Positions 21,615 through 28,647 of a stretch of DNA of 64,000 nt are shown piece by piece. Numbering within the stretch: position 1 is the stretch's first letter; each line of letters starts with the position of its first letter. The stretch is from Iphione sp. A-MEVVRFRX5 (taxonomy: Eukaryota): NCBI GenBank assembly GCA_976226885.1, contig OZ320317.1:33604001-33668000 (forward strand). The letters are read 5' to 3'. The position numbers and the translations under genes were made by a program. The notes under the pieces were generated by a model that worked only from the letters and a program-made list of their open reading frames with translations, was not told the DNA's origin and searched no databases.

Positions 21615-24600
21615 CTCGACCCTTTCCAGCGTAGAAGTCGGGGAGCCAGCCGAGTGGCCTCCCTGGCCGTGGGAGCTGTCCCCGGGTAGCGGTGAAGCGC
21701 TCATCGTTGCTACCAAGGCTCTCGTAGCCGTTGCCGTCTCAGTGGCTGGCGACGGCTGGCCCCCCTGGTTCGGCGGAGGAGGCTGGAGCTCCCCCGCCTG
21801 GCCCTTGGTCGTTTCACCTTCGGCAGCCCTCCTTCCTTGCCACTCTAGGACCTCTCGTGCCAGGCTTCTCGGGTCCCGCTGCGGTAGCCTCGTCGGTGGC
21901 TGCTGAACCGGTGGGGAGTCCCGGGAGCCTTCCTCCGCACCTGCTGGGGTGATGGCCTCATGGACCTCCACCACGCCTCCGACCTCCACGTACTGTAATT
22001 CCGTCGACGCCTGGGCCTTCTTCGTGGGTACATCCTCTTCCTCCTCCCCCGACACTGGCAACTTGTCAGCTAACTCTTCCTCGGAGGAGCTCTCCTTCCT
22101 TCCCCCGGTAACGCTCACCGGACCTTCGGCGGGGACGACTTGGAAGGTATCCCCAAACAAGCTCCTCAAGGTAGCGGCCACTGTTGCCACGTCCTGGGGG
22201 GAGGCTCGGGGGCCCTCCTCCTCGAGCCGCTTGATGATATCGCTGAGGCTTGCTGGCGTTGGGGGCAAGCTTGGTGTCGACAAATTCGATAGACGCCCGG
22301 CCCGCTGGTTCCTCGTCTCCGGTGTTTGTAACCGCGGAGTGGCTGCCCGGTCGGGCAAGGCCGGCGGTGTCCTCTGCTCGATGGACAAGGGCGAGGGAAC
22401 GGAGGGCAGCTGCCCCCCCTTCTTGCTGATCAAAGGGGAGAGAGCACGCCCTCGACCTCGCCCTCGCTTGGGGGCCAGCCCCCCTTCAGCTGCCCCCAAT
22501 CTTCTCTTCGCTGCCGGGCTGCCCTTCGCTGCTGCCTCCGCCGTCGTCGCTGGCGGCCCCAGCATTGCCCGTTCGAGGGCCTCCGCCGCCTCCACCACCC
22601 TCGCCACCGTAGCGGGGGAGCTGCCCGGGGTACCGGGGTGTCTAACCTGCAAGTCGGAGATAGTCCCCCTCAGTTCCTTGCAAAGCGATCTTGGGGATTT
22701 TTCCTCCGCCGCCATCTGCTTCTTCCTTGGGGGAGACCTCGCCGTCGCTCTCCTAGGGGTCCCTCCGCGGGTCCGCACCCCTTTCCTCTTACGGGGAGGC
22801 GAAACTGCTGTTGAGGTGGAGGCCTCAGGCTCCCACTCACTGTCACTTGCCTCAGTTACCGCGGTGCCCTCCTCGCTCGTCTCGCTATCAGCAGGTTTGG
22901 CCGCCGCTGCTACTGCCACCGACTTGGGTCGACCTCCGGAACTCCCCTCACTCTCTTCCCCCGAGCCTCCGTCCTCTCCCTCCTCCTCGACTGCTTCGAC
23001 CCTTGCTCCCTGTGCCGCCACGGCTGGGCTCTTCTTCTTCTTTCCCCGACCGGTCTTCACCTCCGCCGCCTTGCCCTCCGCTTTCTTCGTCGGTGGCTCG
23101 CTGGGCCGCCCTCTGAGGGTGCTCGAACCCCCCACTCTGAAGAACTTGAAGTAGCCCTCCTTCGACTTCTTAAGGAGGGCTTTTACTCCGCCCTCCTCCT
23201 CGTGCTGCCTCGTCTCCAAATGTCTTTTGAGATCCTCCCAGCGTGAGAAGACCTTCTCTTTACACCGGGCCGACGGACACGGCCACGCATAACCTTCCTC
23301 TGCGTGCAATCGGGTATGCCTCTGAAGATTATCCTTTCGGTCGCATGTATAGGTGCATTGATCGCATTTATACACGAGGTCCTTCTTCCTAGTCATCTTA
23401 GCGGGTCGAGAGGAGTTATGAAGTCCTTCGAACGGTGCAGGCGACTTTATACTTCGCTGACCGCGGAGGTGTGAGTTGCTTCCCTCCGCCGAGCTTTGAT
23501 TGGCTGAGGGTTCCCGCCTCAAACTCGCCAGCGTAACGGTCGCTGTCGCCGGGGAATCCCTCACCGCGGAGGCCGTAGACACCTTTCCTGGCTTCAGTAA
23601 GTCTGCATGGACCACCTTCTCGTGTCGCCCTTTCTGTACTCGATAGACGGCGGAGGATAGAGCCTCCCTCACGACCCACGGCCCTTGCCAGAACCTCTGC
23701 AGCTTCGGAGACAGTCCTTTCTTCTTTAGTGGGTGGAACAGATAAACCGTGTCCCCTGGTTGGTAGTCGGTGTGCCTGACCTTTTTGTTATACCAGTCTG
23801 TCTGGCGGGCAATCCCCTCGTTCATGCGATGATAGGTCAGATCGTGTGCCGCCCTAACTCGCTCCCTCAGGTCAGCTGCGTAGGAGTACACATTCCCCTC
23901 TTCCTCATCCTCCTCCGCGGGTGGGCCTCCGTAGGCCAACTGAAGGGGGAGGGTGGTTTCCCTGTGAAGCATCAGGAAGTTTGGCGAGTATCCGGTCGTT
24001 CGATGAGGCGTAGCACGATAGGCCGCCGTTACGAATGGTAGCCGTAGATCCCAATCAGACTGGTTATCTTCCGCCGAGGTAGCGAGCATATGCTGGAGAG
24101 TTCGATTAAACCTCTCTACCTGGCCGTCGGCTTGAGGGTGGTAGGGGGTGGTCCGAGTCTTCTCTACTCCACATAGGCGTAGCACCTCCGCGACCAGCCT
24201 GGCCTCGAAATTTCTTCCTTGGTCACTATGTAGCACCCGTGGGGGCCCAAACCGACACACCAACTCCCTCACCAGAACGTCGGCGGTGTCCTCCGCTGTC
24301 AAGGTACTCAAGGGGAAAGCCTCGGACCATTTAGTGAAGTGGTCTGAGGCTACTAGTACATACTTGGCACCACGAGCTGTCTCGGGGAAAGGACCCAGCA
24401 CATCAACAGCCACCATCTCCCACGGTCCCCCGGGCTGCCTCCGCTGTAGCCGGGTACGCCGCCGACAGTTGGGACTCCTCCGCTCCAAACACGAACGGCA
24501 TCCGCTTCCCCAGACTTGGATATCGCGCGACATTCCTGGCCAGAAGTACTTCGTTCTCAGGAGCCCCGCCGTCTTCTCCGGTCCTAGATGCCCTCCAAAG

Positions 24601-28544: not shown

Positions 28545-28647
28545 CTCCGCCCCTCCGCGGTCCTCCGCACCTCCGCACCTCCGCACCTCCGCACCTCCGC
28601 TAAACCAACAACGACAACCATAACTCCGCTAACCCCAGAAACTCCGC
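28545..28647 (-). promoter_or_regulatory. U3 array of GCGGAG(G/T) motifs
   Basis: CTCCGC on + at 28545, 28553, 28563, 28571, 28579, 28587, 28595, 28624 and 28642, with a tenth at 28509 below the TATA box; all on one strand. The regulatory role is inferred. Confidence 0.75.

What the first reader, a model, noticed from the sequence alone, without database searches (positions are those of the whole stretch)
23202..28647. Retrotransposon-encoded zinc fingers predicted to read the element's own repeated LTR motif (self-targeting ZnF-GCGGAG system)
Seen: two C2H2 fingers (23202-23372) with helices (-1..6) RKDNLQR (F1) and RWEDLKR (F2). Established: R-1/N3/R6 specifies GAG (designed module RSDNLVR); R-1/D3/R6 specifies GCG (RSDDLVR, and Zif268 RSDELTR); fingers bind antiparallel; Asp at position 2 favours G/T 3' of its triplet. 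The predicted site is therefore 5'-GCG GAG (G/T)-3'. Seen: the 5' LTR has 10 GCGGAG copies on one strand, each followed by G or T, nine just upstream of the TATA box; the 3' LTR has 7 plus one variant. Inference: the element encodes a sequence-specific factor for its own promoter, acting as a transactivator, an anti-silencing factor (conceptually like VANC proteins of plant VANDAL transposons, but unrelated), a copy-number repressor or an integrase tether. I do not know of a characterised Gypsy case, but I could not search the literature.
Basis: partly seen in the sequence, partly recalled or inferred. Interest (0 to 1): 0.96.

Follow-up and report, generated by a model that had tools for sequence, protein, structure and literature searches.

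The report
Retrotransposon zinc fingers matching own motif
A young, nearly intact Gypsy-type jumping gene encodes, just after its integrase, a two-zinc-finger protein whose predicted DNA target (GCGGAG) is the motif repeated in the element's promoter and over-represented at silent sites throughout its genes. This points to a self-recognition system that I could not find described for this class of element.

Summary
The window holds a Ty3/Gypsy LTR retrotransposon on the minus strand (19983-28670, LTRs about 99% identical). Two C2H2 fingers lie at 23202-23372, with helices RKDNLQR and RWEDLKR. By the standard recognition code they read 5'-GCG GAG-3'. GCGGAG occurs 10 times in the 5' LTR and 7 times in the 3' LTR, all on the sense strand and all followed by G or T.

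New findings:
- The fingers open a third gene (ORF3: fingers plus a repetitive tail of about 1000 aa). It is in frame with pol and has its own TATA promoter carrying two motif copies.
- Two relatives (55% Pol identity measured for one) have a separate ORF3 with N-terminal finger(s) and their own, different U3 motif arrays. An ORF3-less relative has no array.
- GCGGAG is the most over-represented hexamer in gag-pol against protein-preserving shuffles. The excess is seen in all three frames and on both strands. Density is 37 times that of the flanking DNA.
- This finger pair is rare (0 of 1106 natural adjacent pairs).

Best reading: an element-encoded DNA-binding protein that recognises its own element, acting as an autoregulatory activator or anti-silencer. 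Binding is predicted, not shown. In the relatives the code does not predict the arrays, so covariation remains untested.

The parts
28393..28670 (-). 5' LTR (278 nt; AG-TG...CA). U3 holds the motif array, then TATATAA at 28532-28526 and AATAAA near 28455. The gag ATG at 28408 lies inside the LTR end.
   Evidence: Direct-repeat pair with 19983-20244; sequence read.
28509..28647 (-). Ten GCGGAG copies. They include a tandem array of 8-nt units (GCGGAGGT, 28544-28600) that ends 10 nt before the TATA box.
28373..28391 (-). Primer-binding site TGGTGGCAGCGGTGGGATC. From memory it is complementary to a tRNA-Leu 3' end. The same site occurs in relative L003.
   Evidence: the same site recovers 44 LTR elements.
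27149..28408 (-). gag (419 aa; Retrotrans_gag plus a CCHC knuckle).
23550..27239 (-). pol proper: protease, RT, RNase H, integrase. The relative's Pol ends opposite about aa 1230 of this ORF.
   Evidence: Pfam; 55% identity to P0151 over 878 aa, with the alignment ending at aa 1224.
23445..23511 (-). Candidate internal promoter of ORF3: CCAAT (23503-23499), GGCGGAGGG (motif at 23489-23484), CCTCCGCGG (motif on the other strand, 23463-23468), TATAAAG (23451-23445). The ATG follows 55 nt after the start of the TATA box.
   Evidence: Only 4 TATAAA/TATATAA occur on the sense strand of the whole element: two LTR TATA boxes, this one, and one inside the F1 codons. The region aligns to the TATA promoter of the separate ORF3 in L003.
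23202..23396 (-). ORF3 start (ATG 23396-23394) and two C2H2 fingers: F1 23372-23304 (helix RKDNLQR), F2 23279-23202 (helix RWEDLKR).
21312..23201 (-). Low-complexity Ala/Glu/Ser/Pro-rich tail of ORF3, in the same frame as pol.
   Evidence: no Pfam domain.
21309..21311 (-). Single in-frame stop codon inside the tandem repeats. It truncates the pol/ORF3 frame in this copy.
20280..21308 (-). Continuation of the same frame to the stop at 20282-20280: further 46-aa Pro-rich repeats and an acidic/hydrophobic C-terminal end. The 138-nt tandem repeats span 20684-21615.
20245..20271 (-). Polypurine-rich tract directly upstream of the 3' LTR.
19983..20244 (-). 3' LTR (262 nt) with 7 GCGGAG copies plus one GACGGAG variant; two 8-nt units fewer than the 5' LTR.
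19658..19850 (+). Neighbouring solo LTR of a diverged related family (TG...CA, 4-bp target duplication ATAC). It has four (A/G)CGGAGGG units upstream of its TATA box, and its ATG-GCG-GAG start lies in the LTR end.

Best explanation
The two fingers are the DNA-binding head of a third retrotransposon gene, ORF3: fingers plus a repetitive, probably disordered tail of about 1000 aa. A sublineage of Ty3/Gypsy elements carries this gene after integrase. In this element the ORF3 protein recognises 5'-GCGGAG(G/T)-3', with F2 reading GCG and F1 reading GAG. That motif marks the element in three places: an 8-bp tandem array just upstream of the LTR TATA box, two copies in ORF3's own internal promoter, and about 60 further copies at tolerant positions of gag, pol and ORF3 on both strands.

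Weak two-finger binding would become specific through this clustering. The protein then acts in cis-family fashion to keep the element transcribed, as an autoregulatory activator and/or an anti-silencing factor. It would be made either from the internal promoter or as the C-terminal part of the Pol polyprotein.

Shown: the anatomy, the motif statistics, and the presence of the gene in relatives. Inferred: the binding specificity (recognition code only), the activity of the promoter, and the direction of the effect (activation rather than repression).
For: 1. Specificity. Helix residues R-1/N3/R6 and R-1/D3/R6 correspond to the published GAG and GCG modules RSDNLVR and RSDDLVR. The RKDNL scaffold appears in the AAG module RKDNLKN. 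Asp at position 2 of F1 predicts G or T 3' of the site. The next base is G or T in 17/17 LTR copies, 37/47 internal sense copies and 13/16 opposite-strand copies.

2. Rarity. Among 1726 natural fingers taken from the 150 best hits, which are biased towards similarity to the query, R/N/R makes up 1.7% and R/[DE]/R 1.2%. None of 1106 adjacent finger pairs has this combination.

3. The predicted hexamer ranks first of 4096 in LTR count, in internal count (47 sense, 16 antisense), and in excess over synonymous-codon shuffles (42 observed against 15.0 expected, z=8.2). Under a stricter shuffle that preserves both protein and dinucleotides, applied to gag plus the repeat-free pol core, it is still first: 33 against 18.1, reached in 0 of 500 shuffles. 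Its reverse complement scores 8 against 3.2, reached in 3 of 500. The control hexamers GAGGCG, GCGGAA and GGGGAG are flat.

4. The excess is present in all three reading frames for both orientations: GCGGAG 33/6/3 observed against 12.0/1.9/1.1 expected, and CTCCGC 3/5/4 against 0.7/1.2/1.2. Of 45 Ala-Glu dipeptides, 33 are encoded GCG-GAG. Only 3 of 23 aligned motif sites have the same residues in the 55%-identical relative.

5. Motif density is 9.2 per kb in the element against 0.25 per kb in the flanking DNA.

6. ORF3 is a real gene in this sublineage. L003 and L006 (L006 is L001 re-fetched with longer flanks) have a separate ORF3 downstream of pol, with N-terminal finger(s) and a long repetitive tail. 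L003's ORF3 has its own TATA box 54 nt before the ATG. The window's ORF3 upstream region aligns to that promoter, and it has gained a stretch of about 52 nt that holds two motif copies and a new TATAAAG.

7. Association. All three elements with an ORF3 in this sublineage have short-period motif arrays in U3. The ORF3-less relative L005 has none. The 36 distant elements with the same primer-binding site and at least 300 nt of upstream sequence have at most weak repeats there.

8. The block CGCGGAGGGGCGGAGGG is the only long exact match between this LTR and the diverged solo LTR next door.
Against: - There is no binding or expression evidence of any kind.
- Two-finger proteins bind weakly, the linker is one residue longer than canonical, and F2 has an extra residue. 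Contiguous 6-bp reading is therefore plausible but not assured.
- In the relatives the code does not predict the arrays. L003's fingers (TPAELYR; non-canonical C-x1-C with RKWDYIK) would read roughly GCG-GCT, but its array core is CACGC/GCGTG. L006 has a single finger, and the 3-nt match to its array is uninformative.
- Seeding of the U3 motif into coding sequence is not seen in L001 or L003. L003's ORF3 promoter lacks its own U3 motif.
- This copy's ORF3 frame carries a premature stop that removes the C-terminal third, including the acidic end.
- The sense-strand bias (47 against 16) would also fit an RNA-level signal.
Confidence: 0.45

Rival explanations
1. Integrase-linked DNA recognition. 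The fingers work as a C-terminal extension of integrase. They either tether integration to motif clusters, that is to resident copies or LTRs of the same superfamily (a 'safe haven'), or help integrase recognise its own cDNA through subterminal repeats, as DNA transposases do.
For: - The fingers are in frame with pol, with no stop between.
- Two distant relatives, L023 and L009, also carry finger pairs in frame with pol, 250-300 aa after integrase.
- The arrays begin 16-70 nt from the U3 end of the LTR in all three close elements.
- This copy landed 132 bp from a solo LTR whose (A/G)CGGAGGG cluster is the only such cluster in 55 kb of flanking DNA.
Against: - In the two closest relatives ORF3 is a separate gene, 1.4-5 kb downstream of pol, with its own promoter. 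It is not an integrase domain there.
- No clusters of their own motifs lie within 2-3 kb of the L003 or L006 insertions.
- The neighbouring-LTR observation is a single case in a repeat-rich region.
- Target duplications point to an ATAY-type 4-bp target, unrelated to the motif.
Confidence: 0.17
2. The motif is real but is not read by the element's fingers. GCGGAG(G) would be a site for a host factor (a promoter or enhancer element), or an RNA-level signal on the genomic RNA (packaging by the Gag CCHC knuckle, export, splicing control). The ORF3 fingers would bind something else: RNA, protein or other DNA.
For: - Most copies are on the sense strand (47 against 16 internal; all 17 LTR copies).
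- U3 is present at the 3' end of the genomic RNA.
- The relatives' fingers do not match their arrays by the code.
- The motif block is kept in a diverged solo LTR whose coding capacity is unknown.
Against: - It requires a coincidence estimated at about 2 in 10,000 or less between the code-predicted hexamer and the element's top hexamer.
- The reverse complement is also enriched, about 2.5-3.8 fold in all three frames, which an RNA signal does not explain.
- The preference for G/T 3' of the motif holds on both strands.
- The motif also sits in ORF3's own promoter.
Confidence: 0.23
3. No current function. The fingers would be a captured host fragment now decaying, the LTR array a slippage-prone minisatellite, and the match fortuitous.
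For: - The frame carries a premature stop.
- The two LTRs differ by two repeat units, so the array does slip.
- No homolog of the finger region beyond generic C2H2 proteins was found in 1.84 billion representatives.
Against: - The element is young (LTRs about 99% identical), with open gag and pol.
- The finger-plus-tail module recurs in relatives (55% Pol identity measured for one; distant elements 36-37%).
- The synonymous-site excess in three frames and two strands cannot arise from slippage.
- The fingers here are the most canonical of the lineage (28-35 bits against 15-16 bits in the relatives).
Confidence: 0.1

Closest known systems
VANC anti-silencing proteins of Arabidopsis VANDAL (MULE) DNA transposons (Hosaka et al. 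2017, PMC5735166)
   Same: An accessory protein encoded by the element that targets short motifs in its own family. The targets often form tandem repeats that 'vary considerably between related TEs' (abstract). The same pattern is seen here across the window, L003 and L006. The effect is element-wide rather than limited to the promoter.
   Different: Unrelated protein (no C2H2 fingers) and a DNA transposon of plants. VANC21 localises to non-coding regions (section heading), whereas here the motif is also seeded into coding sequence at silent or tolerant sites. Hypomethylation is demonstrated for VANC; nothing is demonstrated here.
Foamy-virus transactivator Tas with its internal promoter (PMC8670036, PMC4929722)
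   Same: An accessory gene of a reverse-transcribing LTR element, downstream of the structural genes, expressed from an internal promoter. Its product binds both the internal promoter and the LTR promoter, giving positive feedback (abstracts). The window shows the same layout on paper: the motif occurs in U3 and in the ORF3 promoter.
   Different: No sequence similarity, and Tas is not a zinc-finger protein. Spumaretroviruses are vertebrate retroviruses with env. The internal promoter here is inferred from sequence and from homology to L003's ORF3 promoter only.
Chromodomain-integrase fusions of chromoviruses (Ty3/Gypsy); from my own knowledge
   Same: A Ty3/Gypsy lineage that adds a chromatin- or DNA-reading module to the C-terminus of integrase. 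In the window, L023 and L009 the fingers are in frame with pol.
   Different: The chromodomain reads histone marks and directs integration. Here the module is a sequence-specific finger pair followed by a tail of about 1000 aa, and in the closest relatives it is a separate gene.
En/Spm TnpA, and transposases acting as sequence-specific regulators of cognate copies (Sasaki et al. 2026 preprint, 10.64898/2026.08.24.746577)
   Same: Element-encoded sequence-specific proteins that activate cognate copies through repeated sites in the element (abstract).
   Different: These belong to DNA transposons and are transposase-derived. No LTR-retrotransposon example is given.
C2H2/Myb DNA-binding motifs of site-specific non-LTR elements such as R2; from my own knowledge
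   Same: Retroelement-encoded C2H2 fingers with sequence-specific DNA recognition.
   Different: In R2 they read a host target site (28S rDNA) for integration, not the element's own promoter, and they are part of the single ORF of a non-LTR element.

Membership tests
Ty3/Gypsy (Metaviridae) LTR retrotransposon | Two LTRs ending TG...CA, with a primer-binding site after the 5' LTR and a purine-rich tract before the 3' LTR | tested here: met
   LTR pair 28393-28670 / 19983-20244, PBS 28391-28373, purine-rich tract 20271-20245.
Ty3/Gypsy (Metaviridae) LTR retrotransposon | gag with a CCHC knuckle; pol domain order PR-RT-RNaseH-IN | tested here: met
   Pfam: Retrotrans_gag and zf-CCHC in gag. In pol: Asp_protease_2 at aa 77-161, RVT_1 at 389-549, RT_RNaseH at 640-737, Integrase_H2C2 at 864-922, rve at 941-1035, Integrase_p58_C at 1186-1217.
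Ty3/Gypsy (Metaviridae) LTR retrotransposon | Short target-site duplication | tested here: inconclusive
   Flanks read ATAG (or ATAT) against ATAC, a 3 of 4 match. The neighbouring solo LTR and L003 have perfect 4-bp duplications, ATAC and ATAT.
Classical C2H2 (TFIIIA/Krüppel-type) DNA-binding zinc finger | C-x2-4-C-x12-H-x3-5-H spacing with a conserved Leu at helix position 4 and an aromatic core residue | tested here: met
   F1 has exact spacing, with the aromatic residue shifted (Tyr; Cys at the Phe position). F2 is C-x4-C-x13-H-x5-H with F-x5-L-x2-H intact. Pfam zf-C2H2 scores 34.8 bits against a 25.2 cut-off. A beta-beta-alpha fold is predicted twice.
Classical C2H2 (TFIIIA/Krüppel-type) DNA-binding zinc finger | Canonical TGEKP-type linker between tandem DNA-reading fingers | tested here: not met
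   The linker is AEEGYAWP: 8 residues between the last His and the next Cys, against 7 in the canonical case.
Classical C2H2 (TFIIIA/Krüppel-type) DNA-binding zinc finger | Sequence-specific binding to the site predicted from positions -1, 2, 3 and 6 | not testable with these tools
   Only the code-based prediction and the motif statistics are available.
VANC-type anti-silencing system (function-level comparison) | Homology to VANC proteins | tested here: not met
   The only Pfam domains in ORF3 are C2H2 fingers. Every hit I inspected out of the 150 best in 1.84 billion representatives was an ordinary C2H2 protein. It is not a member; the resemblance is functional only.
VANC-type anti-silencing system (function-level comparison) | Cognate motifs concentrated in the element's own family, often as tandem repeats that differ between related elements | tested here: met
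   Arrays: window GCGGAGGT; L006 CGGGC(A/T)GCAC; L003 TCACGCNTGA. Motif density is 37-fold higher in the element than in the flanks.
VANC-type anti-silencing system (function-level comparison) | Loss of DNA methylation or silencing at bound copies | not testable with these tools
   No methylome or expression data. CpG observed/expected is 0.86 in the element against 0.63-0.68 in the flanks, which is compatible with this feature but also with a young insertion.
Retroviral transactivator with internal promoter (foamy-virus Tas type; function-level comparison) | Accessory ORF downstream of pol with its own promoter that shares binding sites with the LTR | tested here: inconclusive
   The sequence shows CCAAT, two motif copies and TATAAAG, with the ATG 55 nt after the start of the TATA box. 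The region is homologous to the TATA promoter of L003's separate ORF3. No transcript evidence exists. L003's ORF3 promoter lacks its own U3 motif.
Integrase C-terminal targeting domain (chromovirus type; function-level comparison) | Module translated as part of integrase across the lineage | tested here: inconclusive
   In frame with pol in the window, L023 and L009. A separate gene in L003 and L006.

The most novel reading that the evidence does not exclude
A lineage of metazoan-type Ty3/Gypsy retrotransposons carries a complete self-recognition module. It consists of an accessory zinc-finger protein with its own promoter, plus a cognate 7-bp motif that selection has spread over the whole element: promoter arrays, and silent or tolerant coding sites on both strands. 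The protein could therefore tell 'self' DNA from host DNA and keep it active. This would be a convergent counterpart of plant VANC/VANDAL anti-silencing and a mirror image of host KRAB-zinc-finger repression. Protein and motif would co-diversify between subfamilies.
Probability: 0.3. Interest if true: 0.9.

Novelty: new variant of a known kind. Interest (0 to 1): 0.78.

Why it matters
Element-encoded, sequence-specific regulators of cognate copies have been demonstrated for plant DNA transposons (VANC, TnpA) and complex retroviruses (Tas). I found no LTR-retrotransposon case in 8.4 million full texts, and no homolog of this module beyond generic zinc fingers.

C2H2 fingers have a partly readable code, so this element gives a directly testable prediction: a defined 7-bp site, defined contact residues, and natural variant arrays in relatives. 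It bears on how a retrotransposon might recognise itself and escape silencing.

The synonymous-site seeding of a protein-binding motif through gag and pol, if confirmed, would show selection on a transposon's coding DNA for something other than its proteins. It also offers a natural two-finger/array pair that could be used as a simple orthogonal DNA-targeting system.

Tried and rejected
1. Homolog searches for the finger region.
- A word-indexed search of Pol residues 1225-1400 found nothing.
- The exhaustive phmmer search gave 726 hits at E up to 0.001. Every one I inspected among the 150 best was an ordinary C2H2 protein. Four long hits are cellular multi-finger proteins. The best two-finger look-alike, P0065, is a Drosophila-assembly gene lying between Vps53 and Psf2, not a transposon gene.
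- Searches of metagenome and viral contigs with the finger peptide were negative. A search with L003's ORF3 N-terminus was negative. An exact-sequence look-up of gag was negative.

2. I first read L001 as a finger-less relative with a U3 array, which would have argued against a link between fingers and arrays. That was wrong. The 'neighbouring gene' at the end of the locus is ORF3, inside the element.

3. I tested whether the coding-sequence motif excess is a general trait of the lineage. It is not: L001 and L003 show no excess of their own U3 motifs.

4. I tested whether the excess comes from codon usage, from the GCG and GAG codons as such, or from dinucleotide context. All three are rejected by the controls (the reversed pair GAGGCG, plus GCGGAA and GGGGAG) and by the dinucleotide-preserving shuffle.

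5. Applying the recognition code to the relatives gave no convincing match, so the result is inconclusive.

6. Similarity between the C-terminal ends of ORF3 in the three elements is weak and not significant for the window.

7. Rfam and tRNA scans of the window found nothing, so the host was not identified. Relatives of Pol come from fish, arachnids and a sponge.

8. I did not run a fold search, because the single-sequence model has low confidence.

9. None of the fetched contigs looked human.

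
Full report
WHAT IS THERE

The window averages about 42% G+C, with a block of 52-66% G+C between 20 and 30 kb. That block is a Ty3/Gypsy LTR retrotransposon on the minus strand, 19983-28670. 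Its parts are:
- LTRs of 278 and 262 nt, which differ by two 8-nt repeat units and two substitutions.
- A primer-binding site directly after the 5' LTR and a purine-rich tract before the 3' LTR.
- gag (419 aa, CCHC knuckle), whose ATG lies in the end of the LTR.
- A 1976-codon pol frame containing protease, RT, RNase H and integrase.

The element is therefore young and, apart from one stop codon described below, open throughout.

THE FINGERS

The stretch 23202-23372 encodes two C2H2 fingers. Pfam recognises both (E=1.8e-8, 34.8 bits against a 25.2 cut-off on the isolated segment). A single-sequence AlphaFold2 model gives two beta-beta-alpha units at low confidence. The closest solved relatives by sequence are designed and natural DNA-binding fingers: Aart, the consensus finger protein, Ikaros/Helios, CTCF, WT1 and Zif268.

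Three details differ from a textbook tandem array:
- F2 has one extra residue before its Phe, and H-x5-H spacing.
- F1 has Cys at the usual Phe position, with Tyr two residues earlier. Many natural fingers among the hits share this variant.
- The linker (AEEGYAWP) is one residue longer than TGEKP-type linkers.

PREDICTED SITE

Published module tables give GAG = RSDNLVR and GCG = RSDDLVR, and they use the RKDNL scaffold in RKDNLKN = AAG (PMC5260015 and PMC7317221). With antiparallel docking (established knowledge of Zif268-type fingers), F2-F1 reads 5'-GCG GAG-3'. Asp at position 2 of F1 favours G or T at the next base.

This combination is rare. I took 1726 natural fingers from the 150 best database hits, a set biased towards resemblance to the query. 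Among them R/N/R makes up 1.7% and R/[DE]/R 1.2%. None of 1106 adjacent pairs has the GAG-type finger followed by the GCG-type.

THE MOTIF IN THE LTR

GCGGAG occurs 10 times in the 5' LTR and 7 times in the 3' LTR, plus one GACGGAG variant. Every copy is on the sense strand and every copy is followed by G or T. Five to seven copies form an 8-nt tandem array (unit GCGGAGGT) that ends 10 nt before the TATA box. GCGGAG is the commonest hexamer of the LTR.

A diverged solo LTR lies 132 bp beyond the 3' LTR, at 19658-19850 on the plus strand, with TG...CA ends and a target duplication of ATAC. It has the same layout: four (A/G)CGGAGGG units, a TATA box, AATAAA, and an ATG in the LTR end. Its only long exact match to our LTR is CGCGGAGGGGCGGAGGG.

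THE MOTIF IS ELEMENT-WIDE

This is the main new result. GCGGAG is also the commonest hexamer of the 8.1-kb internal region, with 47 sense and 16 antisense copies.

Against shuffles that keep the proteins and the codon usage, it is the most over-represented of all hexamers in gag plus pol: 42 observed against 15.0 expected, z=8.2. Of 45 Ala-Glu dipeptides, 33 are written GCG-GAG. GCG is used for 80% of Ala codons before Glu but for about a third of Ala codons overall.

The excess is not confined to that codon pair. It appears in all three frames for the motif (33/6/3 observed against 12.0/1.9/1.1 expected) and for its reverse complement (3/5/4 against 0.7/1.2/1.2). Controls are flat or depleted: the same two codons in reverse order (GAGGCG), and GCGGAA, GGGGAG and GCCGAG.

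A stricter null preserves protein sequence and every dinucleotide. I restricted it to gag and the repeat-free pol core. GCGGAG still ranks first, with 33 against 18.1, reached in 0 of 500 shuffles. CTCCGC scores 8 against 3.2, reached in 3 of 500.

Only 3 of 23 aligned motif sites in Pol have the same amino acids in the 55%-identical relative. The sites therefore sit at tolerant positions and were created partly by amino-acid changes.

The base after the motif is G in 35/47 sense and 12/16 antisense copies, so the unit is GCGGAGG on both strands. Density is 9.2 per kb in the element against 0.25 per kb in the flanking 55 kb.

Enrichment on both strands argues for recognition of double-stranded DNA rather than of the RNA.

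THE FINGERS BELONG TO A THIRD GENE

The nearest Pol relative, P0151 (55% identity), ends opposite residue ~1230 of our frame. In our element the frame runs on through a 60-residue spacer, an ATG (23396), the fingers and a low-complexity tail.

Both of the nearest relatives carry a separate ORF3 downstream of pol and inside the LTRs. These are L003 and L006 (L006 is L001 re-fetched with longer flanks), both from one ENA assembly.
- In L003, ORF3 is 1011 aa. It begins M-A-A-P-D-G-R-L-L, followed by a C-x2-C-x12-H-x3-H finger, a second non-canonical finger that keeps a K-W-D motif like our R-W-E-D, and then Ser/Gly/His repeats.
- In L006 it begins M-A-P-P-D-S-R-L-R, followed by one finger and then Pro/Ala repeats.

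The N-termini align with ours.

L003's ORF3 has a textbook promoter: an inverted CCAAT box, then CCTATAAAAGG 54 nt before the ATG. In the window, TATAAAG lies 55 nt before the ATG. It is one of only four TATAAA/TATATAA strings on the sense strand of the whole element. It is preceded by CCAAT and by one motif copy in each orientation.

The window's CCTCAGCCAATCAAAG aligns with L003's CCTCAGCCTATAAAAG (15 of 16 positions). Our lineage therefore seems to have added about 52 nt carrying the two motif copies and a new TATA box downstream of the ancestral one.

The frame from 23396 runs to 20280, giving 1038 codons, similar in length to L003's ORF3. It has a single in-frame stop at 21309-21311 inside the 138-nt tandem repeats. 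The part beyond the stop ends in an acidic/hydrophobic stretch.

Two distant elements found through the shared primer-binding site (L023 and L009, 36-37% Pol identity) also carry finger pairs in frame with pol, 250-300 residues after integrase.

ASSOCIATION BETWEEN ORF3 AND ARRAYS

All three close elements with ORF3 have short-period arrays between the U3 end and the TATA box:
- Window: an 8-nt unit, 5-7 copies.
- L006: the 10-nt unit CGGGC(A/T)GCAC, about 20 copies.
- L003: a roughly 10-nt unit around CACGC, 38 copies.

A more distant relative without ORF3 (L005, 44% integrase identity, 196-nt LTRs) has no array. Of the 44 distant elements sharing the primer-binding site, 36 have at least 300 nt of upstream sequence, and these have at most weak repeats there.

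The sample is small. Even so, the pattern of different arrays in related elements that each carry the accessory protein is what was reported for VANC targets in VANDAL transposons (PMC5735166 abstract).

WHAT DOES NOT FIT

- The recognition code does not predict the relatives' arrays. L003's fingers would read roughly GCG-GCT, and only the GCG half occurs in its CACGC/GCGTG core. L006 has a single finger, for which a 3-nt match is meaningless.
- The relatives' fingers are much less canonical (Pfam 15-16 bits).
- The coding-sequence excess of the U3 motif is absent in L001 and L003.
- L003's ORF3 promoter lacks its own U3 motif.

No further members of the family could be found.

MECHANISM

I favour, at confidence 0.45, a self-recognition model. 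The ORF3 protein binds clustered GCGGAGG sites through its two fingers. Clustering, and perhaps multimerisation through the repetitive tail, compensates for the low affinity of two fingers (inference). The protein then keeps the LTR promoter and its own internal promoter active.

This layout resembles the Tas and internal-promoter loop of foamy viruses (PMC8670036, PMC4929722). The element-wide sites suggest an additional chromatin-level, VANC-like anti-silencing role.

The rivals, in descending order, are:
- The motif is read by a host factor or at the RNA level, and the fingers do something else (0.23).
- An integrase-linked role in targeting or cDNA recognition (0.17). It is supported by the in-frame fusions and by the single observation that this copy sits beside an LTR carrying the same motif. 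It is not supported by the insertion flanks of the relatives, nor by ORF3 being a separate gene in the closest relatives.
- A fortuitous match in a decaying module (0.10).

NOVELTY

Full-text searches for LTR retrotransposons with C2H2 or accessory transactivator genes returned no such case. Reported domain gains in Ty3/Gypsy elements are described as rare (PMC9289625 abstract). I rate this a new variant of a known kind: element-encoded, sequence-specific regulators of cognate copies.

LIMITS

The host species is unknown. All functional statements are predictions from sequence. The stop codon is reported only by position.

Noticed in passing
window 19658-19850 (+): Solo LTR of a diverged related family, with a perfect 4-bp target duplication (ATAC at 19654-19657 and 19851-19854). 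It lies 132 bp from the 3' end of the main element, in opposite orientation. It keeps the (A/G)CGGAGGG units and an ATG-GCG-GAG start in its U5 end.
   Followed up: yes
window 28408 (-), and 19834-19850 (+): The gag start codon lies inside the last 16 nt of the LTR, so gag is read across the primer-binding site. The ATG is conserved in the neighbouring solo LTR.
   Followed up: partly
window 21309-21311 (-): Single in-frame stop within the 138-nt tandem repeats of the ORF3 tail. The same frame stays open for 343 further codons, to 20280.
   Followed up: yes
window 20684-21615: About 6.9 copies of a 138-nt tandem repeat (also scored as 264-nt and 402-nt periods), encoding 46-aa Pro/Gly/Glu-rich units of the ORF3 tail. 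The relatives have unrelated repeats at the same place: SGSGHV units in L003 and AAEPAPP units in L006.
   Followed up: partly
window 2-814 (+): An open frame with a weak reverse-transcriptase match (RVT_1, E=4.6e-5, below the curated cut-off). It is probably a fragment of another retroelement running off the window start.
   Followed up: no
window 50059-50538 (+): An ORF with a weak immunoglobulin V-set match (E=1.8e-4, below the cut-off). It is a possible host exon and the only hint of a host gene in the window.
   Followed up: no
window 46933-47071: A run of 139 N (assembly gap or masked stretch); left untouched.
   Followed up: no
window flanks against the element: CpG observed/expected is 0.63-0.68 in the flanking DNA and 0.86 in the element. 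This suggests a CpG-methylating host and a recent or protected insertion.
   Followed up: partly
L009 about 3900-4300 (+): The Pol of this distant relative contains what I read by eye as a dUTPase-like stretch, placed between RNase H and integrase. I did not test it against any profile. This is in addition to its post-integrase fingers.
   Followed up: no
L006 18336-18689 (= L001 14336-14689): Five 65-nt tandem repeats, followed by a TATA-like TTATATTG, lie directly upstream of L006's ORF3. They look like a repeat-built internal promoter or enhancer. They contain GCAGC-type submotifs reminiscent of that element's U3 unit.
   Followed up: partly
L004 (whole locus): This Pol relative is embedded in a large tandem array. 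Its self-matches are about 90% identical, about 6 kb long, and offset by roughly 215-nt steps, so it probably sits inside satellite DNA.
   Followed up: no
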